Source: Macrostomum lignano (Eukaryota). From it: a stretch of 64,000 nt of DNA. A program made the translations under genes and the position numbers. This document shows, one piece after another, positions 708-60,523 of this stretch (the first letter of the stretch is position 1; every line of letters begins with the position of its first letter). The notes beneath the pieces are model-generated. The model made no database searches. It saw nothing but the letters and a program-made list of their open reading frames with translations, and was not told the origin of the DNA. The DNA lies in contig NIVC01002236.1 in the NCBI GenBank assembly GCA_002269645.1, positions 1 through 64,000 of the forward strand, given 5' to 3'.

Positions 708-2880
708 TTAGTAGTTTCGGCAGCTTTCGCCTGACCTGCCGCGGAGGCCGAATTCTTGCAGCTCCACCAGCTGCTGCAAGCCGCCGTCCTGATTGTCTTC
801 CTGGTCCGAGTTGCTGGACAGCCGCGGGGGCGGCAGGGCGCTCTCGCAGTGTGTTAGGCAGTCCGCGTCAACGATGCTGCTGTTGCAGCCAAACGCTCGA
901 TCTCTGGCGGCAGCATTCAGGCGACCGGCTCCTCCGGAGCTGTCCGCGCGCCGAATCTCGGTGCCTCCCTGGCGTCGGTGCAGATTGGCGCTGCTCTGGC
1001 GTCGCGAGTCGAAGCTATCGGCCCCAACGTGCCAGTCGAAGCAGCAGAATATTTTAGCGAGAACGCGACGGTAGCCGAGACGGAAGCGCTGCGACATGAA
1101 GTAGTAAACCACCGGGTTGGCTGTGGAGTTGGCAAAGCCAACCAAGTGCAGCATCACCATGGTGAACCCGTAGTTTTTGGCGTAGATGTCTCTGTAAAAT
1201 AGTCCGGCAACGTTCACGGCAAACCATGGCGTCCACGAAACGAGGAACAGAGCCGCGACCACGATCATCATTTTGGCGACCTGATTGGGTGAGAATAATC
1301 ATTGGCTTGATCGGTCTCAGTCAAAATTCTTTTTGTATGCTTATGCCTTTTGCCAGCTAACTAACATGACATTATGTGGCTTAGTTTGTAGAAGACTGGT
1401 TGGTTCCTCCGATCCCTGAGAACGAAAATACTCACCTGCTGGTATGTATCCAGGCGAACATTATTTAAACTTTATGAAAACCACAAGAATTTCTTGTTAC
1501 AGTGAACCCCAACTTTTTTGGCCAAGGGATCAGGACCTCCCTTTTCATTCACCTTCCTCTTGCTCTCCTCCCTGGAGGTCTTCTCCCTGACCGAGCTGCC
1601 CCTGCCGCGGCCATGCCTCCTGGAGCTGACAGCCCGCACGCTGCTCTCATTCTGCCCCGGCACCGGCCGCTGCAAAACCCGCACAATGGAGGCCGAGGTG
1701 AACACCACCACGCAGAGTGGCAGCAGGAACAGCAGGCAGAAGGCGGACATGACGTAAGCGTACCGGCCGCTCGGGCTGAAGCTGTCCATGCAGTGCTGGC
1801 TGCGCATGTCGCCGTAGCCGCTAACGCTGTGGAAGGCCTGGGCGGCCGGGTGCATCGCCTGCACCAGGCAGAAGGCGGCTGGGACGCACCAGGTGAGCAG
1901 AATGAATAGGCAGGTGCGACGGCTTGATTGGAATAGCAGACTGCGCAGCGGGTGCACGATGGCTAGGAACCTGGTTTAGGAGTAAGAGAGTTGCTTTTGA
2001 GCAAATGAGCTCCAAACCATTAAACGAATCTTAACGGTCTGACGACAAAACTTCAAGTTAGCAAAACAGATTTCGGGTTAATATGCCTTTCGCCAAATGC
2101 TCTCACGGTGTTGTAGCCACTGGTTAGAGCGTCGGAACAATTTTCTCGACCCATTCGGAATAAATTGTGTCCTTGAGCAAGACACTTAACTCTGCATTGC
2201 TTCAGTTCACCCAGCTGTAAAATGGGTGCCAGCATTAGCTGGGGTAATTGCTGGTGTGTGTGGCGACCCCCCAGCTCTTGGACTGAACAGCCGTACGCAG
2301 CCTTCAATGCGTACGCTCTAACATTTGTCTTAATTTTTGCATCTAGCTAGTACATGTAGGTCAAATCGTCCAAGAGTCGGATATGCATGCCCCCAAGCCC
2401 CCTTCAGTTAACCAGCATTCTAAGCTAAGGAAGCAAGTCCAAGATAGTAGGCAATGCAATCAGTATAGAACCCGCTCTCAGTTGTCTAACAACTCACCTC
2501 TCAATGCAGATGACAACCAGCGTGAACAGGCTGGCAAAAACCAGCACCATCATGCAGAAGGTGACGAACGCGCAGCCCAGCCGATTGAACAGCTTGGCCG
2601 CAAGCCAACAGGGTCCCAGTAGCTGAAGGCCCTTCAGCGGCACCACCAAGGCGGCGGCCATGAGGTCAGCCGCTGCCAGGTTCAACACGTAGCAGTTGGT
2701 GACGGTTCGCATTGCTCTGTGCAGACAGATGGTGCAGACAACCAGCAAGTTGCCGAAGAACATCATCAGCCCGACGCTGATCCAGACAGCCGCGAGCCCG
2801 GCGCGGACAGCGGGCAGCTGCAGGAGGTCCCAATACTCGGTGGAGTTCACCTCGTGGCAGGTGACAGCAGAAGATGACAT
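708..2880 (-). CDS. Class A peptide GPCR (QRFP/orexin-receptor-like), 3 exons: 2880-2498, 1970-1553, 1280-708; 457 aa
   Basis: GT-AG junctions in matching phase join the exons into one 1374-nt frame. Motifs: TM1 GNLLVV, MRTVTN..LNLAAADL, ERFLAIVHP (rebuilt across intron 1), TM6 SWTP, TM7 NSTANPVVY. The subfamily call rests on recalled motif similarity only. Confidence 0.9.
2105..2310 (+). mobile_element. tRNA-derived SINE with CORE-like domain (family 1, copy 1), in GPCR intron 1
   Basis: Contains GTGTCCTTGAGCAAGACACTTAAC...CTGTAAAATGGG, which resembles the MIR/CORE domain. Alignable by eye to copies at 5216 and 14670. Confidence 0.7.
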
Positions 2881-5425: not shown

Positions 5426-6593
5426 CCGCGCAATAGCGGCGGCTGAGCTGTCGGTAGCACATCTGGCCCAATCGGGGCAGTTTTAATCAGTTATTATTAT
5501 TACGCGTATTATTGCAATACACAAATTCTAGTTAGAGCTACACAATAAAATATAAATATAGTCTAGGAAAAAATGATGCTTCAGTCACACAATATTATTG
5601 CATGCTTTGGTTTTCATGATTTTAACGCTTGTCATGCTGGGTGAGGGGGGGTGACTAATTAGCCGTGTTTGCATTGCCCAGTCAGTCAATTTTTTAAACT
5701 TTACACAGGTAATCTGAGAACTAAGAATTTGCCTCTAACAAACGGCAAAACTGAAAATTTGACAAGCCAAAATGAAATTAGTGCAAGGTTAGCTTGGCTT
5801 TGCTTAAGAGTATTAAATTTCATTTTCTCAGTGATATGGCCTGAAGAAGCCAGAAAAAACTCAAAATTGGTTTTTAGTTTGCTCAGAGCAAAACTGATCT
5901 TGCGGCACGACTTTTACAGCTAATTGCACCCAGCTTTGAATGTTTAATCAGGTTTATAGCGGTGGTTAGTAAGCTTTTCGAGTATATTATGGAAGGACGT
6001 TGTGTCATGGCAATGTCTCGACCAAGGACCACTGGAATGTTATAGTTCTAGTCTAGTAGTCCTTATATTACTCAGGGTATGTTCTCGATTCAGAAACTCA
6101 GACGGTCAGATGCGCATAAATTTGATTAGTCAGTGATAAAAACTGACAACTTTCCATCTCGCTTCAGTAAAATATGTAAGTGTAGCGTCCTTATGATTGT
6201 CCACGCATTGGCTCTAAGGCAACTCTTTGATTCTGCAGCAAACTTGGCTCTGTTGGGTTCAGGCAGACAAACAGATGCAAACCTCAAATTCACTATAAAG
6301 TGTGTCTCTTTATGATTTTTTGCATTACGTTTTTTTTCTCACACACGATAAACTTGTATTCCATCTATCTCAGGCACTACTGCATTTGCGCATTTGCTTC
6401 TTCAACAAAACTTTGCATTCAAGCACAGAATTTATGGCAGCACTTAGCGGTAGGGCCGTAGGGCACGTTTTGGCAAGAACGTCACGTGCTACGAAAATGT
6501 CCAATAAATTTCGTTGGCCCCGAGCTGAGCTCTGGAAAACGTGCTCAGAACCCACACCGCAAACGCACGCATTCGCAGGTGATAGGGTGTGTC

Positions 6594-6656
6594 TATAAAA
6601 GCAACGAATTTCAAAGACCTTTCTTTTCTTGTCAAGCCCGAACCGCACCTGAGTCA
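6594..6656 (+). promoter_or_regulatory. TATA box (TATAAAA 6594-6600) and AP-1 motif (TGAGTCA 6650-6656) of the peptide gene
   Basis: Exact motif matches upstream of ATG 6698. AATAAA at 7332-7337 lies downstream of the stop. Confidence 0.55.
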
Positions 6657-6697
6657 TTGAGAATCTTGCAAGTCACCAACAACGCCAAAGCAACAAC

Positions 6698-7137
6698 ATG
6701 CACCGCCTGACTGTGGCTCTGCTGCTTCTGTCTCTGACTGCTGTGTTTGTCTGCTCGGCCTATGAAGATTCCGATTATGCCGATGACTACGGTGAGACCC
6801 GCATAAGTGGAGATCGAGTTTTTTAAATTAGGTTTTTAGCTATCGGCATAGCCAGCATTTTTTTTTGTAAAAAATTTCAGCCGAGGAACCGGCTCTGGAA
6901 TCTGATGAGGCCGATGACGATGAGGATCTTCAGAAGTGAGTCCAGTGTGGCTTGTAGCTAGCTGCTTCACTGTCTTCTATCTCAAATATTCCTCAAGTTA
7001 TCCCAACTCTTAACTCTGTGTAGCAAAACTACGTAGAAATTAATTTGGCACCAACTGAAATTCCCCCTTATAATTTCAGGCGATGCAGGTGGGTGTACCG
7101 AAGGAAGCACAAGCGGCACACACTGGCGTGTCCTTGA
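6698..7137 (+). CDS. Secreted prepro-peptide, 68 aa, 3 exons: 6698-6791, 6881-6935, 7080-7137; candidate cationic single-disulfide host-defence peptide
   Basis: Strong splice sites (G|gtgaga, tttcag|CC, AA|gtgagt, tttcag|G) in matching phases give MHRLTVALLLLSLTAVFVCSA-YEDSDYADDYAEEPALESDEADDDEDLQ-KR-CRWVYRRKHKRHTLACP*. Hydrophobic signal peptide, acidic propiece, dibasic site, TATA and polyA signal. Confidence 0.85.
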
Positions 7138-7472
7138 GCTGCTCAAGCCAGCCACTTCTCACGGAGGCGACAAATACTTCGAAATTTAGTTTAACAACAA
7201 ATAGTTACTTCAGTGTTCGCCAGAAGCAGTAACCTCTTAAAAAATCTTGTTAAGTCTCTCTAACAGAGTTCTTTCCCCCCGAAGATCGGATGCTAACTTT
7301 TCCATTACACAGATAGCTTGTATATCCACAAAATAAAACACCTGTATAACTTCTCTTGTTTTTTGGCAAAAAGTTACCGCGAAACAATCTAAATATACGA
7401 GTAGCTACTTCAAGTTACCTATCACAGCTTATATTTCTTTCCATACAAATGGAGTGTCAGGCTTTTGTTTGT

Positions 7473-8163
<691 letters not shown>

Positions 8164-8640
8164 GTAGTCGTAGATAATACTTAAAAAGCTTTTGCCCGCC
8201 CGATGCTACTGCAGGTTTGAGCGCGTGCTTATGAGCATTGAAAGCTCTTATCGTAGCGTAGCAAGCCACTCTGGTGCGTCCCTTTTTATTTTGCTTTATA
8301 ATTGCGGCAGAGAATCGAAGCCGCAGCGTTTGTTTATGCCTGGAATTGGGTTTACTTTCTGTCCATTGTTGAAAGCTTCTTTCATTTTATCATCCAGTCT
8401 AAATTACTGTTGCAGTCTCACTTTTGTGCTTTGGGTTGGTACTGTTGTCCACCCCGGGGCAGCTAAGGTGCGTTCATTATTTCAGACGGATTATAATGCA
8501 GAGCATCGTATGCAGGTAAGAGACGAATTAAGTTGCTTAAAGCTTCACAGAGAGTTTGCACAATTTGTTTCGGCTGAAATTAGACAAGCGAACGATTTAC
8601 AGAATGCTGTTATTCGAACTTTATGAGACTCGTTTTTGGC

Positions 8641-9155
8641 CACTGATACTCGAGCTTTGGGGCACTGAGACTCGTACCGCGTGTTTGAGTCACTGAGACT
8701 CGAGTTTTGGGCAACTGAGACTCCTACGTGTTTGAGTCACTGAGACTCGAGTTTTGGGCAACTGAGACTCCTACGTGTGTTGAGTCACTGAGACTCGAGT
8801 TTTAAGCAACTGAGACTCCTACGTGTGTTGAGTCACTGAGACTCGAGTTTTAAGCAACTGAGACTCCTACGTGTGTTGAGTCACTGAGACTCGAGTTTTA
8901 AGCAACTGAGACTCCTACGTGATTTGAGTCACTGAGACTCGAGTTTTAAGCAACTGAGACTCCTACGTGTGTTGAGTCACTGAGACTCGAGTTTTAAGCA
9001 ACTGAGACTCCTACGTGTGTTGAGTCACTGAAGACTCGATTTTTGGGGCAACTGAGAGAGGACTCCTACGTGATTTGAGTCACTGAAGACTCGAGTTTTA
9101 AGCAACTGAGACTCGTACGCTCGTACATGTTTTGAGTCACTGATACTCGAGTTTG
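8641..9155. repeat. 48-bp minisatellite, about 11 units, 10 carrying TGAGTCA
   Basis: Unit GAGTCACTGAGACTCGAGTTTTAAGCAACTGAGACTCCTACGTGTGTT. 48-bp period confirmed at 8781/8829/8877/8925/8973/9021. Confidence 0.95.
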
Positions 9156-9843
9156 GGGCCACATGCGATGGACCAAAATTCATATAAATCTGATTACAGT
9201 ATATGATTAAAGACGAACTTTAAATTTATTAAGTAACCAAGAAAATACAAAATGATGTACTTGAAAAAGTCTTATAGACTTTAGACTTTTTGCGAAAGTC
9301 ACTCACAAAACCGTTAGAACACTGAGTTAAAAACAGAGGATTAGAGGTGGTAGAAGTCACTGAATGAGAATGTATAGCTCTGTGCTTGAGTTTCCTCACG
9401 AATTGCTCTTTCTTTAATACCCCTTGGCTACCAGAGAACTCTGCATTAATTGAGCTGGAGCACTGAAGTTAACTGCAATTGCAAAAGCAATCAGTAGCTA
9501 TTGCAATGGTTAGAGAAGTGGTTAGCGTATTGCGTTTTCTGGTTTTGGCCGCACATAATGACTGCATAGTAGCCAGGGCAATCAAAGGTTTCTATTTTAT
9601 GAATATGAGTCTGATGAGCAGTACTGCACACGTGAGCATCGGTTGTTAGTCTAAGACACGTGAGCTAGTTTCGAGCTGAAAATTCTCTAACAAATTACTG
9701 CATTACCAACAATAAAAGGCTGGCCTTTTGAGTCAGTCTGCATATTTGGGTGGAAGGTTTAGCAATATTTTTGCCCGTGAGTCACGCGCTTCTAGTGCTA
9801 CAACAGCTTTGGCTAAATCATCTGAAACCACTGCGCTGCCATC

Positions 9844-10462
9844 ATGAGCCGCTTCACTGTGACCCTTCTATTCGTGTCTCTATGGTGGTCATGCTAGCTC
9901 GCACAAGTCTTGCGGAATTCAACGGCGATTCTAACTACGGAAATTATGGCGATTGCAGTTCTTTTGCTTTAAAGCAGCTTTTTTCTTGTGATATGCATGT
10001 ATTATGCATTCAGATGAAACAACCAAGGGTACTGCTACGTACTGTATTAATTAATGCATCCATGCTTTTGTGACGGTGTTGTTCAGAATTTAAGAACTCA
10101 CCGAAAGAACGGAGACAGAGTGACAAATATTGGGGCCGTGCACAGGTGTCAAAGTCAATAGCAAAATTCAAAAGATGCTTCAATATATTTATGTACCTCT
10201 GTATACATGCACTTTGCCTCATGCATATTACTTTCCAGGTGCTTTAGAAGAGCCCGCGACAGTCGACGAGTCTGAGACTTCTGATGACGAAAGCGGCGAT
10301 GTTGAAGAGTAAGTTCAAAGCACTGATAAACTGCACAGTTTAATATGAGTTATTGAGAAGTCACAGAACTAACACCTACTACATGTACATGTATATCGCA
10401 ATTTCAGACGCTGCAAATGGAAGTTCGACAGGAAAATTGGTTATTTCAGAAACTTCTGCTAA
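9844..10462 (+). pseudogene. Paralogue of the 6698 peptide gene: exon 1 from 9844 (frameshifted), exon 10239-10308, exon 10408-10462; mature peptide CKWKFDRKIGYFRNFC
   Basis: MSRFTVTLLFVSL matches MHRLTVALLLLSL, then a 1-nt frameshift (TAG 9895-9897); the shifted frame continues SLAEFNGDSNYGNY. The acidic exon (phase 1 to 2) contains EEPA. The last exon encodes R-CKWKFDRKIGYFRNFC* with the same C-X14-C spacing. The exon-1 donor is non-canonical (g|gcgatt). Assembly error cannot be excluded. Confidence 0.75.
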
Positions 10463-11433
10463 AATGATATTTGCAACATTTGAATTTAGTATATACAGCT
10501 GGATAAATTGGGCCAGCTTAAGGTCTTCATTTTTTCACTGCGCTGCACGTACTCCACCAAGGGTTGAATGGAAAAATTTAATTATATAAAATCAATAAAA
10601 TTTATTTACTTTATGACTTGTGTAGAAATAACATGTGGCAAAAAAATGACAAAATTTTCTTAATAGTGAAGTCACAAAGCTCTTGCATGGTTTTTCGCTT
10701 AATTGATGTGGTAACTATACTTGCATGCTTATGTACTCTAATGTATAGCGCGCTGTTCAGTCTTGAGAACTACATGTACTGTATAGCCTCCATTACGTTT
10801 ATCCTTAAACGTTTATCCCATAAATTTCGTTTTCTTCATCATTCTAGATATCATGACAAAGAGCTAGAGTTACCTTTATATGAATTACATGCTGTAACTA
10901 CCACGAACTAGCAGCTTTGCATACAAAAAGTACACGTACCGTTACCAATTAGTAACAATGCAACACTACATGCAAGGACATGTATACTTCAATGTACATA
11001 CATGTACATGTACATGTACGTGGTCTTTTTAATTTGGCAAGGACCACTGCTGTATATAACAGTTATATACTGCGGCCCTTGCATTTTGGTACAGTATCAA
11101 ATATTTTGTATGACTAAATTTACTATGGAATTATTAGTACAAACCAATAATGTTTTTAGGAATAAAGTTATTATCCTAACCGCCACAAACCCTCTGTAAA
11201 AAAATTGTTCAACTGACAAATGCACTCATAACTGAACGTAATCAGCCAAGTAGATTTTGTAAGATTTCGTAGCAAAACTTACCGGCATCTAAATATTGTT
11301 TTAACTGACAATTTTAAAATATGTAATTTGTAAGAAACACTTACGATGAACTCTGACGTGAGGCCGTGAGCATTTGACTCGACACTCGAGGCTGACACAA
11401 ATGATACCAACTGTCAATAATCAAGATATTTTA

Positions 11434-11962
11434 GGCAGTGCTTATCCCCACGGTACCGTAGGAATAATTTCTGTCTTATTCCAACGGTACCGTGCGAATA
11501 ATTTTCTGTTTATCCGCACGGCACACTGAGGAGATAGCTGCCCTATCTTCTACATATGCCGTGTGGGAAGTTTAGTACATACGATTTGAGTGCAGTATAA
11601 CAACTTTGTTGAATTATTGTTGAATAAGTATACAGAAGGGTATCAGTAAAGCAGAATAACACGCATTTACACATGCATATACTAGTCTAGAACTGATTCG
11701 AGTTTATACATCATCAAGATCAACAGCTTCTTAGTATCCTCAGTTCAAATTCCCTTTCAATAAGCTATAAACTATTCACGCACAGCATATGTAGCAGATA
11801 AAAACCGATAGGGCAGCTAGTAAAGCAGAGGGAATAAAACAGAGGACGTGTAGGGCAGCTATCTCGTCAGTGTGCCGTGCGGATAAGCAGAAAATTATTC
11901 GCACGGTACCGTTGGAATAAGACAGAAATTATTCCTACGGTACCGTGCGGATAAGCACTGCC
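11434..11962. mobile_element. Non-autonomous DNA transposon (MULE/Mutator-type MITE), 529 bp
   Basis: About 111-bp near-perfect TIRs (GGCAGTGCTTATCC...GCTGCCCTA) and a perfect 9-bp TSD GATATTTTA at 11425-11433 and 11963-11971. Confidence 0.9.
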
Positions 11963-14092: not shown

Positions 14093-14597
14093 CACGTGAG
14101 TTTCATACGGTGAGCGTGTGAAACTTCCTCATTTGGTCACAAAAATCGTGCGAGCGACGCGTGATTCAAGGCCAACATCCAAATAAGGCAACCCTGTCAT
14201 GCAGCAGTGGCGTGACTCAAGGTCAGTGGCCACGCACAGTGTGCGTGCACAGTCACGTGCTTTTCTATGCTAAAAATAGAACATGGGCAGATGAGTCATC
14301 TTGTTTACTCCCTCTAGGCAGCCATTTGACTCCGCACAGGTGATGAGTCATTCTGCTACACCTCCTCAGCGCGAGTGGGAAGACATTAAGTGTGGCTGCC
14401 CGCGCCTGCTTTGGCGATGAGTCATCAGGCAGTAAACACTTAGGCCCAGCACAGGGTATCTCTCTCACTAGATCAGGTGGACTGAGCTACTGTGCAGCGG
14501 ATCACAGCACTCTTAGGGAAAGCTAGTGAATGCTTTTGAATAACCATCTAGCCTAGCAGCCAGTCACTACAAATGCAAAGATATTGTTAATGAGTCA
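14093..14597. promoter_or_regulatory. Cluster of 5 AP-1 motifs and 2 CACGTG E-boxes
   Basis: TGA(C/G)TCA at 14213, 14292, 14344, 14418 and 14591; CACGTG at 14093 and 14254. Non-repetitive context. Confidence 0.5.
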
Positions 14598-16967: not shown

Positions 16968-17909
16968 CTGCTCCCGCTGCTGCAGCCTGCTTGACGATTT
17001 TGATTTACCATGCTGTTTTTCTGTCCGTTTATATTCTCTAATAAGCCACGATTTAAGTATTGATTTTAATTTTGAGCACGCTGAGCACCTGCGCAAGTCA
17101 ATGTTGTTTAAAATAAAAGTTGAACATTTATCACCAGACTACGGATATGATAACTAACTTTCTTGAATACAGTAAATGCCATATCTGTGTCTAGTAAACT
17201 ACGTTAATTAAAATATATCGTTTTACGAGCGACTACAACCAGCGCTGAAGAAATTCTGCCTATTCCGCAGGCGCGCAGGCACGCAATCATACACACGCTC
17301 ACACAGTGTGTTCAGCGCCCAGACTGGAGCTTCTGGTAAAAATTGCTCCGTAATTTTCAAATAAGGAGGCTGCATTGATCAAAGCTTCTTGCTAATTTTC
17401 TTGTTCTGTTTTCTTTCTCTGTTTGTGACTATTTTTTTCATTCTTTATATTATCTATTCTTCGAAAAGAGTGTATTTCTGCCGAGACTAGCGTCTTTAAA
17501 ACCTTATTCTTGAATGTAGAATTTAACTTAAGAGCAGATCCTTGATCATTATGTCCTGGGAAGTAGGTATTAGTTGAATTTATAATTGATTTTATTAAAC
17601 AAAACTGGCTTCCTTGTAAGGAATATCGCTTGTCCGCCTTGTAAGCGTCAAAATGCTACTAATGAAAATTCGGATACTTTTTATTGATACGTGCTTTTTG
17701 TTTTTCAATAGTTTGCTTAAGTTGAATAGAAAGGGTCATAATTTAACTGTAGGTTCGTGCTTTTTCGTTAGTATTATTGATGGAAGACCTTTGCAAAAGT
17801 AGGTCCTAATAAGTGCTAACATGTTAACTGAAAGGGAAACTTATCTTGTCACTACCGCTTAACATTCGTCACTTAAATCCTAATAACGAATGTTTAAATT
17901 GATTTGCAG

Positions 17910-20096
17910 TCTCGTCTAATCTTCCGGGCATTGTTTAGTCCTCTTGGCGCCTTTGTGGTGCCCTCTGTTGGCAAGACTTGGACCGCGTCGGCAGCCTCTG
18001 CGCCGTTGCTGCTGAGCCGCCGGCTAGCGGGCCACTCCCGCTGGCAGAATGTCCGCGGCGACAAAGAGGCCGGAATGGCCCAGAAACGGACTTTGATGTC
18101 TCTGTACACAAGAATGCTGCGCCAAGCGGTTATTAACGGAAATGGCAGTACAAATGTTCAGACTAATGTTCACCTGAAAGCAGTGTTTGACAAAGCCAAA
18201 TCGGATAATGTGCCGCTGAAAACTTTGGAGCGAATGCTGGCGGCAAAGTCGGTTGAAGCGGCTGAGTCCTATGCTGTTGAGGTTCGGGGCCGCGGTGGCA
18301 TCTGCCTCTTGGTGGTGTCTAATAGTCCGCACCGAACTAAGTGCAAGCATGAGGTTAGCCCGTCTGTTTGATCAGCTATGGACGTCATAATTAAAGATCA
18401 GGCCGTTCTCTCTGTCTCTCTCTCTCTAATTGATATTTCTGGCTTTTAACTTTTGCCAGCATTCGAAAAAGGAGATTATCAGTCTCACTCTTTGATTCTT
18501 TACTCTAATTAAAGACAGATTAAAGGCAAATACTTCTCGGTGCTAGCTTGTAATAAGAGTTTCCATGTAGATATTTCTTTACGATATTCCTGTGCTCTCA
18601 AGGGATATCGGCATGCCGCAGATCAAAGGCAGTCCTTAGATATTAGAGTGCCAATGTGCCTTGGGATTCGCAACCTTGGCTGAGATTGTATTTGAAATCT
18701 AAATCGCTCCTTAAAGCCTCCCATTGCTGTCTTGAGATTTCTATCAGAATCTCAAACAATCGTCAATCTAAAAGAAGATCCTTGACGTTTTAAAGGCTGA
18801 ACTGCCTAAGAAAATTATTTTTTTCTGATCTAGAATGGAGGGTCGAAGGCACGTGTTAAATGATCTTATAGCTTTTTTATGGCTCTATAGCTTTGGATAT
18901 TAAAATTAACATAGAATGCTAATTTTCAAAACAAATAAAAGCTTTATGAATATCAATCGAGCGATACGAAATGCTTGTTTCGGGCTCCGTTTCGACTCTC
19001 AAGTTCACATCCTCTTTTCATGAGTACAGGCCTGATACAGTGGTAACTTGACTCAATTTTCTGCTTAAATTTTTCTCAAACTGGCACCTCATGGAGTTAT
19101 TATATTAAAAATGATATTGTGATTTTACAACTGTATTGTGCCTTTTAGAAGTTCAAAAGCGGAATATTGTCAATTTAGTACTTAGAACTCCGCATTTCTA
19201 GTGCAATTGTGCAGCCAAAACAACTTCCCATAACGATCACACGAACTGCGAGTTTAAGGGGTCTTCTGCTTTAGTTCTCCATTGTCTGAAACTGATCAGA
19301 TGGTGCCGGGAAGTCAAGTTGAAACGGTAGGAAAAAGAGAGAGAGCGTATGCCAACTGGACAACAGCTTCATTATATTTATATTTATCAGTTGGGCAACA
19401 CGAATAATTAATTGAAATGCCAATGTACGGAACGCTAGGGACTGGTGTGAGGTGGCGTGATCAGCATACGCGGGTTAGAGAAAACTGGAGGGTTGGGGTT
19501 GGCTAGAAGGGTTGGGGTAATGTACGAGAGAAAAGGGTACGATTGCAAAACACCGATCAGATCTCCCACCCTCTGGAACTTTATTGACTTTTGCAGCCTT
19601 GGTGCTGGAAAATGTAATTAAAAATGCTTCGAACTATTTGTTAATTTCACCCCAGGTGGCCAGCCAGGTGAAACGAATCGGCCTGGAGGTAGCCGGCATT
19701 GATTCGTCCATCAGTAAGAACTTCTATGAAAAGAAAGGCTGCGTAGAGGTGGCCCACGATCCGGAGCGGCTGCCCAATCTGGACCGGGCCACTGAACTCG
19801 CGCTGGAATTCGACTGCACCGATGTGCGCTTTGAATCTGCTGGCGACAGCGTTGAAGGTGGCAGCGGCGCCTTCGTGTTCGACTGCGCCCCGGTCGCCAT
19901 CAACTCGGTCGCTGACGGGCTTCGCTCTGCCGGCTTGTCCGTCTTGGACGCGTCAGTGCGTTACGAGCCGTTCGAACGGGTGGAAATTGACGAGCAAACA
20001 ATGAAGCTTTTGAACGAATTGGCTGACCGACTGCGCGACTCTGTTGGTGGCTTTGTTGAATTGTTTGACAATGTGGCCCCGGTTGGCGCCACCTGA
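17910..20096 (+). CDS. TACO1: Translational activator of cytochrome c oxidase 1 (YebC/PmpR family), exons 17910-18353 and 19656-20096; start codon unresolved
   Basis: AGHSRWQNV motif (family AGHSKW) after an Arg/Ser/Leu-rich presequence; YEKKGCVEV; phase-0 intron GAG|gttagc...cccag|GTG. The 294 codons match the expected family length. Confidence 0.85.
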
Positions 20097-21872: not shown

Positions 21873-23271
21873 CTACAGGTCTTTGCTGCGCGCTTCGTTG
21901 CCATCCTCCATGCCCCCTGGGTTGTTCGTAGCAGTCGTCTTACTAGGGAGATTGTTCATATCGACGCTGCGGTTTGTGCCCTTCTGGCTGACGAAGGTGC
22001 TGGCTCCGATGCTGCCCTGCAGTTTGCACCAGCTGCCACAGATGAGGCGCAGCAGCCTGCCGCAGGCAATGCGGTAGCCGGAGCGGAACTCCTTGTTGCT
22101 GAGCCCGTAGACGAAAAAGTTGACGCTCGAGTTGGAGTGGGCAAATAAGATCGCATAAGCGTGCACGTGAATCGGGAAGCTGTCGTCCCAGTCCAGAGCC
22201 ACGAAAGCCGCGTACGGAGCCCAACAGAGAGCGAACACGGCGAACACGATGAACAGAGTGCGGGCCAGGCGGATCGAGTCTAGGCTGCCACCAGGTCGGT
22301 CGTTTCCGCTGTTCGGAGCTCCGCCCTGCGCATCTCTGGCATTTCCCAGCTGCAGATGGCGCACCCGAGCCATCGCCTGCCTGACGTGCACGAAGATGCG
22401 AAAGTAGCAGATGAGGATCACAATGCTGGGCGCAACTACAGCGCAGCACGAGAAGAAGATCGTGTAGGACCTGTCAGCCATGCGGTTCCACACGCAGGCA
22501 AAGTTCTTCCTGTCGTAGGCAAAGTCGCCCCAGCCCACAAAGTTGGGAAACTGCAGCAGCCAGCTCACAATCCACAGGCCGACGCAGAGCGCTACGCAGC
22601 TGCGCCGGTTGAAGAATCTGTTGTAGCTGGCGTTGTTGCAGATAAAGACGCAGCGGTTGACGGCTACAGCGGTAATGCTGAGCAGCGAGCAGTAGCAGGA
22701 GGTGAGGCAGGTCGACGCCACGAACTCGCACAGAGCAACTCGCTGCTCGAAGTAGATCTCGCCGTGCATTACGCCTGGAATTGCGTTTTTGATTTGGATA
22801 GTCTGTGTAGTTGAAGTCAACGTCTGTGAAGGCAGTCAGTGCAGTGACTTACCAGTGATGGCGAATGGGTCAACGAATATCGTAATGCACAGATCGGCGA
22901 TGGCCAAGTTCACGACGAACAAATTTCCCACGTGTCGCAGAGTCTGAAAATGCATACAAATAATTGTTCATTTTTACACTCGACTTGAGTACGTGTGCTG
23001 CCCATTTGCTTGCTCACCTTTTGGAGGAACACGGCGCAGATAACCAGGATATTGCCGATGGTCCCCACCGTTGAACCGAATGTCAGAAGGAACAAACCAG
23101 GAAATGTAATCTCTGTGGTATTGGGTTCGAATGCAAGCTTCTTTCTAGACACAAGCAATTGCACGGTTTTTAGTCTGGCTTGTTTTTTGTAAAATATATC
23201 TTACCTGGCACGACGTACAGAAGACTCTGCAGCGTGTAGTTAAACTGTGGCGATATCCCAACGATATCCAT
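21873..23271 (-). CDS. Melatonin-receptor-like class A GPCR, paralogue A; exons 23271-23205, 23112-23018, 22943-22853, 22774-21873; 384 aa
   Basis: Intact 1155-nt spliced frame. GNILVI, NLFVVNLAIADL, AVNRC (the NRY of melatonin receptors), YDRKNFACVW, CWAP, NSSVNFFVYG. Confidence 0.88.
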
Positions 23272-26082: not shown

Positions 26083-27603
26083 TTAATTACCCTTGACACG
26101 CGGACGCTCCGATTCCCTGTTAGATGTGGACGCCGTCAAAGTGTCGAATGCGGTTTTTTTGAGCTTAGTGGCTGCAGTGGGTTCCATCTCCATTACAAGA
26201 ATGCTGTTAGCGGCTCCAACGCTGGCCTGCGGATTGCACCGACCGCCGAAAAGCAGGCGCAGCACTTTGACTAAAACGAATCGATATCCGGTGCGAAACT
26301 CCTTATTAGTGAGCCCGTAGACGATAAAGTTGACGCTCGAGTTGGTGTGCGCGAAAAGCACAGCGTAGGCGTGCACGTGGATCGGGAAGCTGTCGTTCCA
26401 GTCCAGAGCCACGATGGTCGCGTACGGAGCCCAGCAAAGAGCGAACACGGCGAACACGATGAACAGAGTTCTAGCAAGGCGGATCGAGTCAAGGCTGTTG
26501 CTGCCACCGCTCCCTCGGCCAGCCCCTTGCGCCGAGTCTCCGATCTGAAGTCGCCGTACCTGCGCCATTACCTGCTTGACGTGCACGAAGATGCGAAAGT
26601 AGCAGATGAGGATCACAATGCTGGGCGCAACTACAGCGCAGCACGAGAAGAAGATCGTGTAGGACCTGTCAGCCATGCGGTTCCACACGCAGGCAAAGTT
26701 CTTCCTGTCGTAGGCGAAGTCGCCCCAGCCCCAGTCGCCCCAGGAAACTGCAGCAGCCAGCTCACAATCCACAGACAGACGCAGAGCGCTACGCAGCTGC
26801 GCCGGTTGAAGAATCTGTTGTAGCTGGCGTTGTTGCAGATGAAGACGCAGCGGTTGACGGCTACAGCGGCGATGCTGAGCAGCGAGCAGTAGCAGGAGGT
26901 GAGGCAGGTCGACGCCACGAACTCGCACAGGGCGGGTCGCTGCTCAAAGTAGATCTCGCCGTGCAGCAACCCTTTAATACAAGTAGGGAGCATGTATTCT
27001 GACGTACATGTAACATAAAAGTTGCTTTGTTAACGATAGTAACTCCACTCTCACCAGTAATTGCCATGGGGTCGACAATAGTGGTGATGCACAGATCAGC
27101 GATAGCCAGATTCACAACGAACAGGTTGCCCACATGCCGCAGTGTCTGCAAGTGCAGCGCTAATTATTTGATTTGTCAGATTAAATTAAACAGTTCCAAG
27201 CTTGTTCATATTACTGCTGCGTCAAGATTTACTTGTATTGAAATATTTCTAAGTTTTTTTAGCAGGCTGTTTTATCTTTCTGAGCAATAATAAAACAGCG
27301 ATTGAATCACGAGCGTGTATTACACATAGAATTTTGTAATACCTTTAGCAGAAAGATGGCGCTGATGACCAATATGTTGCCCAGAGTTCCAATTGTGGAT
27401 CCAATAGACAGCAGTGCGAGTCCGGGATAAGTCAGCTCTGCAGTTTTTGTTGAGAAAGGGGTACAGTTGAACTACGAGCGTATAAGGTGATAGTTGTATA
27501 GGTGACCTGTAAAGAGTTTATTGTCTAAAAATTTACCTGGCAAAATATGCAACAGACTCTGCATTGTGTAGTTGAAGCTTGGCGCCATTCCTGCAATGTC
27601 CAT
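26083..27603 (-). pseudogene. Melatonin-receptor-like GPCR, paralogue B, frameshifted in ECL2; exons 27603-27537, 27437-27343, 27145-27055, 26971-26083
   Basis: Same 67/95/91-nt exon sizes as A and C. 11 nt present in A/C are replaced by 13 nt (a local copy of AGTCGCCCCAG) at 26731-26743, a +2 shift with an early stop near 26631. Confidence 0.85.
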
Positions 27604-27922: not shown

Positions 27923-30900
27923 GCCTTACTTTACTTAGCTGCAGGGGGCTACGTGCGTCAGGAAACAGCGAGGAGGCGTTGCCGCCCATTTTGCTAACCC
28001 CTGGCGACCACGGGCAGCTAGTGCTGCGGTGTCGCGCAGGGAGTTCTGGTGGTGCCGGTGTCCGCAGCGCGCTCCCCTCCGGAGAGTCCAGGAGGTGGAT
28101 GGTCGATCGCCCGGTAGCCCTTAGGTAGCGGACGAGCTGGCAGAGATTCTCGGACCTCGGTTTGGGCCGAGGTAGGTGAGCCTGACCTGAGTAAAGGCGG
28201 GGCATTCACAGATGATGCTCCGCATTCTTGACACCGGAGAGGCAGAAAGGGAATTTCTCGCTGCGGATTCTTCCCTGAAGGTGGTGATGCCTGGCAAAAC
28301 AGCCATGACCCGAGAGGGCCATTGTCACCGCCTTGATGTCCCTGCTGCGCAGGGCGGAGGAAGACAAGGGACAGCCGCGCGGGATTGCCGGAAGTCAGGG
28401 GATTTTTCCACCTCTCCCTGTGCTTTGAAGCCAACCCACTGGTTGACCCGAGTGGTGACAACGGCGGTGGGGGTCGGGGCCACGGGCAGTGGACCAGTAA
28501 AAGAACCGGTCGAGCCAGCCTTGGCCAGGCGATCGGCCAACTCGGGCCAACCAGGGGTGGCCCGAGTGCCCACCTTAGTGACCACCGAGGGATCCACCTT
28601 AGGGACACCTTGCTGAAGGCGCCTAAGCGGTTGAGCTGCCCGATGCAGTCAAGGACTGTACGCGAGCAGGTGGTGGTGCGCTCAAGGGCGTGAATCGCCG
28701 CTTGACTGTCCGAGTGGAGGGTAATCTCCTTCTCCCAGACCCGCTGATTATACAGCTCCATGGCGCAGGAGCTGATGGCGAGAACTTGCGAGCCGAGAAC
28801 TGGCGAGCTCCATGGGGAAGGTGCCGGTGTGCAGGGAGAAGGTCGCCACAGCTCTCCCTCCAGATACGATGCAGTAGCCGTAACCAGAGGCGGAGTTGAT
28901 TTGGGACCCGTCAGTGAAGCAGTGGATTTCACGGGATTTCCAGTTGTCCCTTGCTTCATGGCGTGGTGGAATGCTGGTTTTGAATTTGAGCGGAGGGCAG
29001 GGCGTGGACGGGATCCCGTTCAAGAGGGTCAGCAGGTCTCCCGCTGCTTCCAGGTCTCGCAGGCTAAGGTCGCTGAGGTCGTCGTGCGGCCGGAGGTTCC
29101 GCTTTCTGAAGGCGAACTGCTTCTGGATTAGGACACCCTGACGCGGGTGGTCTTCATTGCCTCCCCTTGAAGAGGTCAAGGGGGGAATGTCCAGGAAGGA
29201 GTTCATGCCAGCGAAGGGCGTTGAGGGAGCCGCGCTCATGATAGCTCGACAAGCGCGGCCTTGCACCCTATTTAGAGCCTCAAGAACCCCTTTCACCTCT
29301 AGGGCACTGTTCTAAATGAAGCCGGCGAAGGAGATGGCCGGTCTAACAATGTCAGTCTAGATCCACCAGAGGCGACGGGGATGAGGCCCCAGGTAGCGCC
29401 GAAAGCTCTGCGGATCTGTGCGAGAGTCGCGAGAGCTTTGCGGGCTTTGGTTTGGACGTGCGGGGTCCGACTCAACCTGTGGTCGAGGGTGACGCCCAGA
29501 CATCTGGTTTGTTTCTCCATGGCAACGGGTTTGCCATAGAGGGAGAGCGGTTAGATCCTCCAGTTTCGGCGGCTCGTGAACTGCCTCAAGTGAGGTGAGC
29601 AGCCTCAAGCAGAAAGTGAGCAGAATCTGAGGCCACAGCCGTGTGCCCAGCGTTCGGCACAGTGGATGAAGGCTTTAAGGAGGTCCCTGAGGACCACGAG
29701 TGATAGTCCAGCCACAGTGGCGGTAACATCGTTCGCATAGCCGACCTTCTGAACTGGATCCGGATGCGGGCTACAAAGCAGCGCGTCCATGACTAAATTC
29801 CAGAGAATCGGGCTGAGGACTCCACCTTGCGGTCCGCCTTTCTGGACCTCTGAGCAGGAGTGTCCCAGGAGGTGCGAGGTGGCAGTACGATGGGAGACCA
29901 TGTACATGTTCCAGCGGGTAAGGTGCTCGTGCGTGCCCCGGGATTCCAGGGCCCGCCTAAAGGCTTCAAAGAGCACATTATTGAAAGCACCATCAATGTC
30001 GAGGAAAAGCGACAGCTTGTATCCACTGCCAAGCACGGCGCGCTCCAGCTTGTCGATACTGGCGTGCAGCGCACTTTCGATGGAGCGTCCAGGACGAAAG
30101 GCGTGCTGAATGGGGGAGAGCGGGAGTTCCTCAGCTCCACGAGGAGGAGGCGCCAGAGCAACAGCTGTTCCATCAGTTTGAGGAAGAAAGACGTCAGATT
30201 GATGGGGCGGTAAGCTTTGGTAGAATGATAGTCTCCCTTCCCTGGTTTGGGTATGAAGACCACCGTGGCCTCTTGCCAGGCTTTTGGCACGTACCCGAGG
30301 GTAATGCTGCCCTAAAAAGGGGTTGCAGAGAGACCAAGAAACCCGTCATTTTTCACTACCTCATGGAGGAAGGCAGGATAAATGTTGTCAGGTCCCGGTG
30401 ACTTAAAAGGAGAGAAGGATTTAGCGGCGCGAGCCGTCCTCTCTCTAGAAATGATGATTGAAACCAGGATCTGTCCACCCGGAGAGTGGTCCGGTGGGCC
30501 TAGCTGCGGTGCGGCACATGGGAAAGAGCTGGTGAGCATGATGTCCAGCGATTCCTTGGGGTTCTCAGCGAGCCGGCCATTCGGTCTTTTAAAATGACTG
30601 AGAGCTTTGAACTTTTGTCAAGGGTGAGAGCCTTAACCACGCGTGAAGTACGGCGGGTGCCTTCTAACTCCGCGCAGTATTGGCGTCAGAGCTTTCTGTT
30701 GGAGGCAATTTGCCTTGCGCCGGAGAGATCCAAGTGCTGGGTGCCACCAAGGGGCGGATTTTTTTCCTTTGTAGGCTTTAAGAGGACAGTAAGCCTCATG
30801 AGCTGTCAGAACGGTTTTGCTGAGCAAGTCAGCAAGATCATCCACTTCCTGACAGGTGGTTGGAGCGGCGGTGGTCAGCTGATCAATCTGGCATTTAAGG

Positions 30901-33472: not shown

Positions 33473-33914
33473 TCGATTTTTATGTGTTGAATTTATATCT
33501 TCAGATTTAGTTTCTTGTAAGAACTACTGATGGATAACTTCTTCTATTTAACGCAGTTTTACGACAAGCAAGAAAGATAAGAGTGTAGACATAGATAAAA
33601 GACAAAATTACTGACGGCAAAACATAATTCGTGCACGAGACAAGTTTTTCGCATTTTCTCGACATATTTCTTAGAAAAAAGAAATTGGTCCAATTCCCAT
33701 AAAATTAAATTGACAAAACGAGCTCCATGCAGTGTTGGTACCAGCAACTACTTCTATGTTGAAATTAAGTCAAATAAATCCAGTGAATTCGTGTAGATCT
33801 TACAGATTGTACTCTGACAACAGATTTGTCGTTGAAAAATGCGACTAAGCTTCCAGAATTGAAGTGGTCACTTTTCATTGTCAAGGTTGGAAAAATAGGC
33901 TTTTTAATGGTATC

Positions 33915-41627: not shown

Positions 41628-42922
41628 TTATTTTTTCTTATTAGCTGTTGCCACCTCCATCTCCATCCTGCTTGTCAGATTCACCGCTCCAGCGCTGGTC
41701 TGAGGGCTGAACCGCCTGCCACAGATGAGGCGCAGCAACCGCTCGCAGACTGTGCGATATCCGGTGCGGAACTCCTTGTTGCTGAGCCCGTAGACGATGA
41801 AGTTGACGCTCGAGTTGGTGTGGGCAAATAAGATCGCATAGGCGTGCACGTGGATCGGGAAGCTGTCGTCCCAGTCCAGAGCTACGATGGTCGCGTACGG
41901 AGCCCAGCAGAAGGCGAGCACGGCGAACACGATGAACAGAGTGCGGGCTAGGCGGATCGAGGCCACGCTGCCGCCGGGTCGGACGCTGTTCGAAGCTCCG
42001 CCCTGCGCATCTCTGGCATTTCCCAGCTGCAGATGGCGCACCCGAGCCATCGCCTGCCTGACGTGCACGAAGATGCGAAAGTAGCAGATGAGGATCACAA
42101 TGCTGGGCGCAACTACAGCGCAGCACGAGAAGAAGATCGTGTAGGACCTGTCAGCCATGCGGTTCCACACGCAGGCAAAGTTCTTCCTGTCGTAGGCGAA
42201 GTCGCCCCAGCCCACAAAGTTGGGAAACTGCAGCAGCCAGCTCACAATCCACAGGCCGACGCAGAGCGCTACGCAGCTGCGCCGGTTGAAGAATCTGTTG
42301 TAGCTGGCGTTGTTGCAGATGAAGACGCATCGGTTGACGGCTACAGCGGTAATGCTGAGCAGCGAGCAGTAGCAGGAAGTGAGGCAGGTCGACGCCACGA
42401 ACTCGCACAGAGCAACTCGCTGCTCGAAGTAGATCTCGCCGTGCATTACGCCTGGAATTGCGTTTTTGATTTGGATAGTCTGTGTAGTTGAAGTCAACGT
42501 CTGTGAAGGCAGTCAGTGCAGTGACTTTACCAGTGATAGCGAACGGGTCAACGAATATCGTAATGCACAGATCGGCAATGGCCAAGTTCACGACGAACAA
42601 GTTGCCCACGTGGCGCAGCGTCTGGACATTCAAGACGTAGTTCGTGTTATTTACGGATTTGTAAATAATACTGAAAGAAAATTTTACCTTTTGCAGAAAG
42701 ATGGCACCGATGACCATGAGGTTTCCCATCGTTCCAACGGTAGCGCCGAACGTCAGAAGAATCAGCCCGGGATAGGTCACCTCTGCAGTGGGTATTTAGT
42801 TGTGGTGGTTATTGTAAAATGAACTTTCTGAAAGCATGTTCTGTATGTTGCTTACCTGGTATTACGTGCAATAGACTTTGCAAAGTATAGTTAAACTTAG
42901 GTGCCAGTCCTGCAATGTCCAT
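41628..42922 (-). CDS. Melatonin-receptor-like class A GPCR, paralogue C; exons 42922-42856, 42782-42688, 42621-42531, 42451-41628; 358 aa
   Basis: Intact 1077-nt spliced frame with the same exon sizes and motifs as paralogue A. Confidence 0.88.
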
Positions 42923-50359: not shown

Positions 50360-50492
50360 NNNNNNNNNNNNNNNNNNNNNNNNNNNNNNNNNNNNNNNNN
50401 NNNNNNNNNNNNNNNNNNNNNNNNNNNNNNNNNNNNNNNNNNNNNNNNNNNNNNNNNNNNNNNNNNNNNNNNNNNNNNNNNNNNNNNNNNNN
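50360..50492. other. Assembly gap (133 N), followed by a (TGTC)n tract to about 50568
   Basis: Run of N in the sequence. Confidence 1.
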
Positions 50493-50569
<77 letters not shown>

Positions 50570-51241: not shown

Positions 51242-51404
51242 AATTCAGTGATCACTTGCTGTTGAGGGCTCCTCTTCTTTGTCGGGCAGGTTCTCCGAGC
51301 TCGTTTCTTCAGTCCGTTTCCTCCTGAGTAGTCTTCTTGAATTCTAAAATCCGACCGAATGTGAGAGCGTCACGATTTAATCCGTCGACGTCGAAGTATT
51401 CTTC

Positions 51405-57798: not shown

Positions 57799-60523
<2,725 letters not shown>

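What the first reader, a model, noticed from the sequence alone, without database searches (positions are those of the whole stretch)
6594..7337. Hidden 3-exon gene for a candidate new disulfide-bridged cationic (antimicrobial-type) peptide
Seen: three micro-exons invisible to the ORF track splice in phase into a 68-aa precursor. It has a 21-aa signal peptide, a 28-aa propiece with 15 Asp/Glu and no basic residue, KR, then CRWVYRRKHKRHTLACP (6 Arg/Lys, 2 His, one Cys pair with a 14-residue loop). TATA, AP-1 and AATAAA are in the expected places. Known: an acidic propiece neutralising a cationic C-terminal peptide is the layout of alpha-defensin and frog-skin peptide precursors. Single-disulfide beta-hairpins are seen in arenicin, thanatin and bactenecin. 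A signal/pro/mature exon split is typical of conotoxin genes. I do not recognise this sequence as any named family, and unlike arenicin precursors it has no BRICHOS domain. Inference: a lineage-specific host-defence peptide or toxin.
Basis: partly seen in the sequence, partly recalled or inferred. Interest (0 to 1): 0.88.

Follow-up and report, generated by a model that had tools for sequence, protein, structure and literature searches.

The report
Flatworm cationic disulfide-loop peptide precursor gene
The three-exon gene is real and is already in GenBank as an unnamed "hypothetical protein" of the flatworm Macrostomum lignano; it encodes a small secreted precursor whose tail is a strongly basic 17-residue disulfide loop with no known relatives and no tested function.

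Summary

The window is the first 64 kb of Macrostomum lignano contig NIVC01002236.1. The same CDS is already annotated as hypothetical protein BOX15_Mlig016089g1 (PAA59732.1). That annotation was built only from RNA-seq transcripts, so a spliced mRNA exists and the gene is not hidden.

New findings:
- A 98%-identical second genomic copy lies on another contig.
- A tandem paralogue lies 3.1 kb downstream, with the same exon plan and the same loop motif, C[RK]W.[YF].RK.{7}C. It is broken in this window and intact on the sister contig.
- Synonymous sites between the two paralogues are saturated, yet the architecture is kept.
- The cationic loop diverges about twice as fast as the signal peptide and the acidic propiece.

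No homologue was found in Pfam, PDB, a 5.8-billion-protein index or a full HMMER scan of 1.84 billion proteins. These searches could not have detected even the in-locus paralogue.

The antimicrobial role is untested. It is plausible, and a signalling-peptide role is a close rival. This is a new orphan family of a known kind, of moderate interest.

The parts
6594..6601 (+). TATA box (TATAAAAG), 104 nt upstream of the ATG of gene 1
   Evidence: Identical in the second genomic copy.
6650..6656 (+). TGAGTCA (AP-1/bZIP-type heptamer), 48 nt upstream of the ATG and downstream of the TATA box, so probably in the 5' UTR
   Evidence: The stretch 6600-6697 is 98/98 identical between the two genomic copies, against 2.8% divergence further upstream.
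6698..6791 (+). Gene 1 (BOX15_Mlig016089g1) exon 1 CDS: signal peptide (aa 1-21) and the start of the acidic propiece; ends in phase 1
6792..6880 (+). Intron 1, 89 nt, GTGAGA...AATTTCAG
   Evidence: Introns 1 and 2 together show 11/231 mismatches between copies, against 3/207 in the CDS.
6881..6935 (+). Exon 2: acidic propiece (EEPALESDEADDDEDLQ + first two bases of the Lys codon); ends in phase 2
6936..7079 (+). Intron 2, 144 nt, GTGAGT...AATTTCAG
7080..7137 (+). Exon 3 CDS: last base of the Lys codon (K of KR), then R, then CRWVYRRKHKRHTLACP and the TGA stop
   Evidence: The range matches the GenBank CDS end.
7332..7337 (+). AATAAA polyadenylation signal, about 195 nt after the stop
   Evidence: Retained in the second copy.
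9778..9784 (+). TGAGTCA 60 nt upstream of the paralogue's ATG. Conserved in the sister-contig copy, whereas the nearby site at 9729 is lost there.
9844..9948 (+). Paralogue (gene 2) exon 1, disrupted in this window. A 2-nt insertion near 9882-9883 gives a TAG at 9895-9897 after 17 codons. A 5-nt insertion destroys the GCAAGT donor.
   Evidence: The intact version is in L002.
10239..10308 (+). Paralogue exon 2: acidic propiece (ALEEPATVDESETSDDESGDVE..); same phases as gene 1
10408..10462 (+). Paralogue exon 3: last base of a Glu codon (E of ER), then R, then CKWKFDRKIGYFRNFC and the TAA stop. C-x14-C spacing as in gene 1.
   Evidence: 55/55 identical in L002.

Best explanation
This is a genuine, transcribed gene of Macrostomum lignano. 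It encodes a 68-aa secreted prepropeptide of a lineage-restricted (orphan) family. The family has at least two tandem members, and the locus is present in two genomic copies.

Proposed route:
- A 21-aa signal peptide sends the precursor into the secretory pathway. This is inferred from the sequence.
- The 28-aa, Tyr-rich propiece (net charge -15) masks the basic tail during transit. This is inferred by analogy with other acidic propieces.
- A Kex2/furin-type convertase cuts after Lys50-Arg51. This is inferred.
- The product is CRWVYRRKHKRHTLACP, closed by one Cys52-Cys67 disulfide into a 16-membered loop. Predicted mass is 2207.158 Da.

I commit to the released loop being an extracellular effector of the host-defence type, that is, a cationic Trp/Arg loop that binds anionic microbial surfaces. 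The reasons are that the loop is the fastest-evolving part of the precursor while its Cys frame is fixed, and that the family shows duplication with decay of one copy.

What is shown: the gene, its splicing, the paralogue and their conservation. What is inferred: the processing, the disulfide and the activity.
For: - Gene and splicing. The identical protein and CDS range are in GenBank, and that annotation was made solely from RNA-seq-guided transcript assemblies.
- Second genomic copy (L002): the CDS has 3/207 differences (one V6A in the signal peptide, two synonymous) and no indels. The introns have 11/231 differences plus indels (Fisher p = 0.06).
- Tandem paralogue: same three-exon plan, same intron phases and the same C[RK]W.[YF].RK.{7}C motif. 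It has the same layout: signal peptide, an acidic propiece with no basic residue (13 Asp/Glu in 36 aa), and a cationic loop of net charge +4.
- Age and constraint: synonymous sites between the paralogues are saturated (pS 0.58-1.17). dN is 0.50 for the signal peptide, 0.35 for the propiece and 0.99 for the loop. Conserved prepro with a variable mature peptide is the pattern of toxin and antimicrobial peptide families (established knowledge).
- Decay: one paralogue copy is pseudogenised in this haplotype or subgenome.
- No alternative ORF or RNA family explains the region.
Against: - No expression site, induction or peptide data could be found. Supplement searches of seven M. lignano papers gave nothing.
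- The loop is very hydrophilic: hydrophobic fraction 0.29 and GRAVY -1.29.
- The paralogue has Glu-Arg, not Lys-Arg, before the loop, and an Asp inside it.
- Gene 1 has internal RRK and KR sites that a convertase could cut.
- The N-terminal half of the loop keeps specific residues (basic residue at position 2, Trp, an aromatic residue, Arg-Lys). That looks more like a receptor pharmacophore than a pure charge pattern.
- AlphaFold2 without an alignment gave a low-confidence helix, not a hairpin (mean pLDDT 64, pTM 0.29).
- The difference in selection between CDS and introns of the two copies is only marginal (p = 0.06).
Confidence: 0.42

Rival explanations
1. Signalling peptide (neuropeptide or hormone). 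The precursor is processed in neurosecretory or endocrine cells, and the C-terminal disulfide loop is the ligand of a receptor, probably a GPCR. The paralogues would serve different receptors.
For: - A single cyclic peptide at the extreme C-terminus after a dibasic site, preceded by an acidic spacer, is the layout of somatostatin, urotensin II, MCH and allatostatin-C precursors (established knowledge; Aplysia UII example in PMC3493602).
- The conserved positions cluster in one half of the loop, C[RK]W.[YF].RK, as a pharmacophore would.
- The paralogue contains W-K-F, which recalls the W-K-Y/T core of urotensin II and somatostatin.
- The C-terminal Pro would protect against carboxypeptidases.
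Against: - The loop is the least conserved part of the precursor (5/16 identical, dN 0.99 against 0.35-0.50). Most neuropeptide precursors show the opposite.
- Ring size is 16 residues, against 6 for urotensin II, 12 for somatostatin, 10 for MCH and 8 for allatostatin-C.
- No Pfam hormone family matches. There is no amidation signal.
- The internal RRK and KR sites would be cut by neuroendocrine convertases.
- The nearby GPCR genes give no specific link. The apparent galanin/somatostatin-receptor similarity of a C-terminal fragment disappeared with the full-length model. The other receptors are melatonin-receptor-like.
Confidence: 0.3
2. Another gland secretion, in which the conserved acidic Tyr-rich propiece is the functional or co-functional product. 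Examples would be a sulfated acidic peptide or a zwitterionic secreted mini-protein of reproductive, adhesive or epidermal glands. The basic tail would be a variable partner or would stay uncleaved.
For: - The propiece is the most conserved segment between the paralogues (15/30 identical, lowest dN at 0.35).
- Shared DS[DN]Y and EEPA motifs.
- Tyr residues flanked by Asp/Glu are typical tyrosine-sulfation contexts (established knowledge).
- The paralogue lacks a dibasic site before the loop (ER), so cleavage is not assured.
- Small, fast-evolving, lineage-specific secreted proteins are common among reproduction-related genes in Macrostomum (PMC7336406 and PMC8662610, abstracts listed).
Against: - Mlig016089 does not appear in the held supplements of the reproduction-related gene studies. 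This is weak evidence, because stored files may be truncated.
- KR directly before the first Cys in gene 1 is a textbook convertase site.
- The Cys spacing and the loop motif are conserved, which would not be expected for a mere variable appendage.
Confidence: 0.15
3. The RNA is transcribed, but the short ORF is not translated or has no function. It would be a young or decaying lineage-specific locus.
For: - There are no homologues outside the species in any search.
- One paralogue copy is already a pseudogene.
- The intact paralogue copy is not in the transcript-based annotation.
- CDS-versus-intron constraint between the two copies is only marginal.
Against: - The paralogues have saturated synonymous divergence, yet both keep the signal peptide, acidic propiece, intron phases, Cys spacing and loop motif. 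That requires long purifying selection.
- The CDS has no indels between the copies, while the flanks and introns do.
- The homology searches were shown to be blind at this divergence: the paralogue would score E = 0.89.
Confidence: 0.08

Closest known systems
Single-disulfide cationic antimicrobial loops: lactoferricin B ([25 protein letters not shown]), thanatin, bactenecin, arenicin (sequences recalled from memory)
   Same: - One Cys pair closes a strongly basic loop rich in Arg/Lys with Trp/Tyr.
- The start of the loop, C-R-W-V-Y-R-R-K, resembles [10 protein letters not shown] of lactoferricin B.
- Net charge is +6, as in arenicin-1 and thanatin.
   Different: - There is no sequence homology.
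- Lactoferricin is a proteolytic fragment of a large protein.
- Arenicin precursors carry a BRICHOS domain, which is absent here.
- Bactenecin is a cathelicidin.
- Hydrophobic content (0.29) is much lower than in arenicin or bactenecin (0.50-0.57).
- Activity is untested.
Precursors with an anionic propiece and a cationic mature peptide (alpha-defensins, frog-skin peptides, Hydra arminins; conotoxin-style signal/pro/mature exon split)
   Same: - Signal peptide, then an acidic propiece with no basic residue, then a dibasic site, then a cationic C-terminal peptide.
- One exon per module.
- The prepro region is better conserved than the mature peptide.
   Different: - Two Cys rather than the six of defensins.
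- The Pfam Conotoxin model is below threshold (14.4 bits against 25.1, E = 0.075) and matches only the signal/pro region.
- There are no sequence relatives.
C-terminal cyclic neuropeptide precursors (somatostatin, urotensin II including Aplysia apUII, MCH, allatostatin-C)
   Same: - A small precursor with one disulfide-cyclised peptide at the extreme C-terminus after a basic cleavage site.
- Aromatic and basic residues inside the ring (W-K-F in the paralogue).
   Different: - The ring has 16 residues, against 6 in apUII (CLWKVC), 12 in somatostatin, 10 in MCH and 8 in allatostatin-C.
- No family HMM matches.
- The loop is poorly conserved between the paralogues.

Membership tests
Arenicin / BRICHOS-derived beta-hairpin antimicrobial peptides | BRICHOS domain in the precursor upstream of the mature peptide | tested here: not met
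   Pfam scan of the 68-aa precursor and of the paralogue at E up to 1 found no BRICHOS domain. The precursor is only 68 aa.
Conotoxin superfamilies (Pfam PF02950) | Score above the Pfam gathering threshold; conserved signal sequence and Cys framework | tested here: not met
   14.4 bits against a cutoff of 25.1, E = 0.075, covering residues 4-57 only (signal/pro). The paralogue gave no hit.
Alpha-/beta-defensins | Six cysteines forming three disulfides in the mature peptide | tested here: not met
   The mature region has exactly two Cys. No Pfam defensin hit.
Somatostatin / urotensin II / allatostatin-C type peptides | Ring of 12 (somatostatin), 6 (urotensin II) or 8 (allatostatin-C) residues with an F-W-K-T / W-K-Y core; family HMM match | tested here: not met
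   The ring is 16 residues (C-x14-C) in both paralogues. Gene 1 has W-V-Y and only the paralogue has W-K-F. No Pfam hit. The apUII ring is CLWKVC.
Melanin-concentrating hormone | C-x8-C ring containing R-V-Y-R-P; so far described only in deuterostomes | tested here: not met
   The spacing is C-x14-C. V-Y-R occurs in gene 1 only and is not conserved in the paralogue. No Pfam hit.
Generic convertase-processed secreted prepropeptide | N-terminal signal peptide | tested here: met
   By inspection and hydropathy only. The 12-residue cores have mean Kyte-Doolittle 2.75 and 2.93, with small residues at -3/-1 (CSA|Y and SLA|E). SignalP was not available.
Generic convertase-processed secreted prepropeptide | Dibasic (KR/RR) site immediately before the mature peptide | tested here: inconclusive
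   Gene 1 has Q-K-R|C. The intact paralogue has E-E-R|C, which is monobasic with no upstream basic residue. Actual cleavage is not testable here.
Cationic membrane-active antimicrobial peptide (functional class) | Net positive charge with an amphipathic, sufficiently hydrophobic structure | tested here: inconclusive
   Net charge is +6 (gene 1) and +4 (paralogue). Hydrophobic fraction is 0.29 and 0.38, and GRAVY is -1.29 and -0.78. AlphaFold2 gave no confident fold.
Cationic membrane-active antimicrobial peptide (functional class) | Measured antimicrobial activity and/or induction by infection | not testable with these tools
   No expression or activity data were found in the held literature or supplements.

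The most novel reading that the evidence does not exclude
Mlig016089 and its tandem paralogue found a previously undescribed, Macrostomum- or flatworm-specific family of disulfide-cyclised cationic peptides with the motif C[RK]W.[YF].RK.{7}C. The family would be either the first gene-encoded antimicrobial peptide family characterised in a free-living flatworm model, or a new cyclic ligand family for orphan flatworm receptors.
Probability: 0.4. Interest if true: 0.55.

Novelty: new member of a known kind. Interest (0 to 1): 0.36.

Why it matters
Macrostomum lignano is a transgenic, RNAi-amenable regeneration model, and almost nothing is known about its secreted effector peptides. I found no described antimicrobial peptide for the genus in the held literature.

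A validated small cyclic cationic peptide family would give a handle on flatworm epithelial or gut immunity, or on a new peptide-receptor pair. It would also provide a compact 17-residue scaffold that is easy to synthesise.

The practical result for the scan is more modest. The gene model is already public and transcript-supported. What is new here:
- the family definition, meaning the tandem paralogue and the shared loop motif;
- the pseudogene status of the paralogue copy in this contig;
- the pattern of conserved prepro region with a divergent loop.

Tried and rejected
1. Homology searches found nothing real.
   - The word-indexed search of 5.8 billion proteins, with the precursor and with a three-sequence alignment including the paralogue, returned only the gene itself.
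   - A full phmmer scan of 1.84 billion representatives returned only long proteins matched through acidic low-complexity stretches.
   - Pfam and PDB sequences gave nothing.
   - Control: the in-locus paralogue would score only 25.7 bits, E = 0.89, at that database size. Absence of hits is therefore weak evidence.
   - L002 never appeared in the Python file area. The intact paralogue was therefore typed in.
3. Expression evidence. The full-text search for Mlig016089 and supplement searches in seven M. lignano papers gave no occurrence.
4. Link to neighbouring receptors. The C-terminal fragment of the GPCR at 708-1271 hit galanin and somatostatin receptors best. The reconstructed 470-aa receptor is equally close to beta-2 adrenergic, CCK and TRH receptors. 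The other three receptors are melatonin-receptor-like. I rejected these as evidence.
5. Urotensin II-like idea. The Aplysia apUII ring is CLWKVC, so ring size and motif do not fit.
6. AlphaFold2 on the single sequence gave mean pLDDT 64 and pTM 0.29. This is too poor for a fold search, so none was run.
7. Planarian prohormone papers describe no comparable cyclic peptide in their main text.
8. An Rfam scan of 5500-11500 found nothing. No other ORF explains the region.

Full report
**Where the window comes from.** The spliced 68-aa protein is 100% identical to GenBank PAA59732.1, [quoted passage not shown]. Its gene lies at 6698-7137 of contig NIVC01002236.1 in assembly GCA_002269645.1 (Mlig_3_7). 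The first 17,137 bases of that contig are identical to the window. The window is therefore the first 64 kb of a contig from a free-living flatworm. Its content fits an animal genome:
- long microsatellites and minisatellites;
- a non-LTR retrotransposon and a Tc1/mariner element;
- several rhodopsin-class GPCR genes;
- a TACO1/YebC homologue.

Exon 1 (6698-6791), exon 2 (6881-6935) and exon 3 (7080-7137) are joined by introns of 89 and 144 nt. The donors are GTGAGA and GTGAGT, and both acceptors are AATTTCAG, in phases 1 and 2. The product is MHRLTVALLLLSLTAVFVCSAYEDSDYADDYAEEPALESDEADDDEDLQKRCRWVYRRKHKRHTLACP.

- the propiece is 28 residues with 15 Asp/Glu and no basic residue;
- KR follows the propiece;
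- the tail is 17 residues with 6 Lys/Arg, 2 His and two Cys separated by 14 residues.

TATAAAAG (6594), TGAGTCA (6650) and AATAAA (7332) are present. The TGAGTCA lies downstream of the TATA box, so it is probably in the 5' UTR. Without splicing, the ORF stops after 42 codons. No other ORF or Rfam family accounts for the region.

**The gene is not hidden.** The GenBank annotation of this assembly was produced only from RNA-seq data. It used StringTie/TACO genome-guided assembly, a de novo transcriptome, and the TBONE boundary pipeline. An annotated CDS with exactly these exon limits therefore means that a spliced transcript exists. I could not see the reads themselves.

**A second genomic copy.** Protein PAA57557.1 (BOX15_Mlig016089g2) differs by V6A and lies on contig NIVC01002472.1 (locus L002). 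M. lignano has extensive genomic duplication, so this is an allelic or homeologous copy. Over 1.36 kb the two loci are about 98% identical.
- The CDS has 3/207 differences: one non-synonymous change in the signal peptide and two synonymous changes. It has no indels.
- The introns have 11/231 differences and a 2-nt indel.
- The 98 nt between the TATA box and the ATG are identical.

This direction fits purifying selection, but the test is only marginal (Fisher p = 0.06).

**A tandem paralogue defines a family.** A tblastn search with the precursor against the window found three weak, collinear hits 3.1 kb downstream. Reading the DNA shows the same three-exon plan:
- exon 1 from 9844;
- exon 2 at 10239-10308;
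- exon 3 at 10408-10462, encoding ...E-R-CKWKFDRKIGYFRNFC-stop.

In this window the copy is broken. A 2-nt insertion near 9882 gives a TAG after 17 codons, and a 5-nt insertion destroys the donor of intron 1.

On the sister contig the copy is intact and uses a canonical GC-AG intron (TATG|GCAAGT). It encodes a 76-aa precursor, MTRFTVTLLFVSLVVMLARTSLAEFNGDSNYGNYGALEEPATVDESETSADDESGDVEERCKWKFDRKIGYFRNFC. That copy is not in the annotation.

The two proteins share:
- intron phases;
- a hydrophobic signal peptide;
- an acidic propiece free of basic residues, with DS[DN]Y and EEPA motifs;
- a C-x14-C loop with the common pattern C[RK]W.[YF].RK.{7}C.

The back-translated pattern matches exactly twice in the window. 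None was expected or seen in 100 shuffles. It matches twice in L002 as well.

**How the family evolves.** Synonymous sites between the paralogues are saturated (pS 0.58-1.17), so the duplication is old. The architecture has nonetheless survived, which argues for long-term selection. Non-synonymous divergence is uneven: 0.50 in the signal peptide, 0.35 in the propiece and 0.99 in the loop. Only 5 of 16 loop residues are identical, and all of them are in positions 1-8 or are the closing Cys.

A conserved prepro region with a divergent mature peptide inside a fixed Cys frame, together with tandem duplication and decay of one copy, is what toxin and antimicrobial peptide families typically show (established knowledge). 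Most neuropeptide precursors show the opposite. With only two sequences this is a pointer, not a test.

**Comparison with known families.** Nothing matched.
- Pfam gave only sub-threshold noise. Conotoxin scored 14.4 bits against a cutoff of 25.1 and covered only the signal/pro part. There was no BRICHOS, defensin or hormone family.
- PDB sequences gave nothing.
- The 5.8-billion-protein word index returned only the gene itself, with the single sequence and with the family alignment.
- The exhaustive phmmer scan of 1.84 billion representatives returned only long proteins matched through acidic low-complexity segments.

As a control, the true paralogue would reach only 25.7 bits, E = 0.89, at that database size. 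These searches cannot see relatives at paralogue-level divergence, so "orphan" means "no close relative".

Ring size (16 residues) and motif exclude membership of the somatostatin, urotensin II (Aplysia apUII ring CLWKVC), allatostatin-C and MCH families. By eye, the nearest functional analogue is the lactoferricin B loop ([10 protein letters not shown]..., recalled from memory), set against C-R-W-V-Y-R-R-K here. That similarity is convergent at best.

**Function.** No expression, induction or peptide data could be found.

Physicochemically the gene 1 loop has net charge +6 but is very hydrophilic: hydrophobic fraction 0.29 and GRAVY -1.29. That is close to thanatin and far from arenicin or bactenecin (reference sequences from memory). 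If the loop is drawn as a two-residue-turn hairpin, W3, Y5 and L14 fall on one face. This is inference only. AlphaFold2 without an alignment gave an unreliable helix (mean pLDDT 64, pTM 0.29).

Points against a simple antimicrobial reading:
- the ER rather than KR site in the paralogue;
- the Asp inside the paralogue's loop;
- the internal RRK and KR sites of gene 1;
- the residue-specific conservation of the first half of the loop.

The neighbouring GPCR genes give no specific ligand-receptor hint.

**Verdict.** The gene is real, transcribed and already annotated as a hypothetical protein, with about 0.93 confidence. It is very probably a secreted prepropeptide. I rate four explanations of what it does:
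- an extracellular host-defence-type effector, about 0.42;
- a signalling peptide, about 0.30;
- another gland product in which the conserved acidic Tyr-rich propiece matters, about 0.15;
- a non-functional or untranslated ORF, about 0.08.

It is a new sequence family of a known kind, and of moderate interest. The value added here is the family definition, the pseudogene call for the paralogue in this contig, and a set of directly testable predictions: junction reads, in situ hybridisation, and peptide masses of 2207.158 and 2108.024 Da.

Noticed in passing
window 8641-9139 (and L002 14053-14370): A 48-bp minisatellite lies between the two peptide genes, about 700 bp upstream of the paralogue. 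Each of its ~10 units carries a perfect TGAGTCA (AP-1-type) heptamer inside a short GAGTC...GACTC inverted repeat. The array is kept, with 7 units, on the sister contig. The window holds 25 TGAGTCA sites against 9.4 expected. It could be an enhancer-like array or just a satellite.
   Followed up: partly
window 14213-14597 (and L002 18868-19252): A second local cluster of six TGAGTCA heptamers within about 400 bp, also conserved on the sister contig.
   Followed up: no
window 708-2880, minus strand: An apparently unannotated three-exon rhodopsin-class GPCR gene (exons 2880-2498, 1970-1514, 1280-708; 470 aa) with E-R-F in place of D-R-Y. The full-length protein is about equally similar to beta-2 adrenergic, CCK, TRH and galanin receptors, so the ligand class is open.
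   Followed up: partly
window 21873-22820, 26083-26928, 41628-42780, minus strand: Three paralogous melatonin-receptor-like GPCR ORFs (best PDB matches MT2/MT1, E ~1e-20; N-R-C motif). The copies at 21.9 kb and 41.6 kb share near-identical stretches, which suggests a recent segmental duplication. At least one copy (26 kb) looks truncated or frame-disrupted.
   Followed up: partly
window 17904-18371 and 19584-20096, plus strand: Two exons of a TACO1/YebC-family gene. Pfam matches are TACO1_YebC_N (E = 2e-11) and Transcrip_reg (E = 1e-12).
   Followed up: partly
window 28000-33500 and 46548-47794: A GC-rich (0.59) non-LTR retrotransposon remnant with an endonuclease-reverse transcriptase domain and many overlapping ORFs. 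A separate Tc1/mariner element has a DDE_3 transposase and a Tc3 HTH domain, split over two frames.
   Followed up: partly
window 7473-8163, 58703-59111, 51398-52870, 53466-53986: Very long simple repeats: (TATC)n of 173 and 102 copies, a 26-bp satellite of 57 copies and a 10-bp repeat of 52 copies. The (TATC)n array starts about 135 bp after the polyA signal of gene 1. Repeat-length differences probably account for most of the ~1.9 kb difference in intergenic distance between the two genomic copies; this was not checked.
   Followed up: no
window 49106-49921 and ~50200-50450: A protein-kinase-domain fragment ORF (Pkinase, E = 9e-17), followed by a run of N (an assembly gap, seen as X in ORF 49997-50617).
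   Followed up: no
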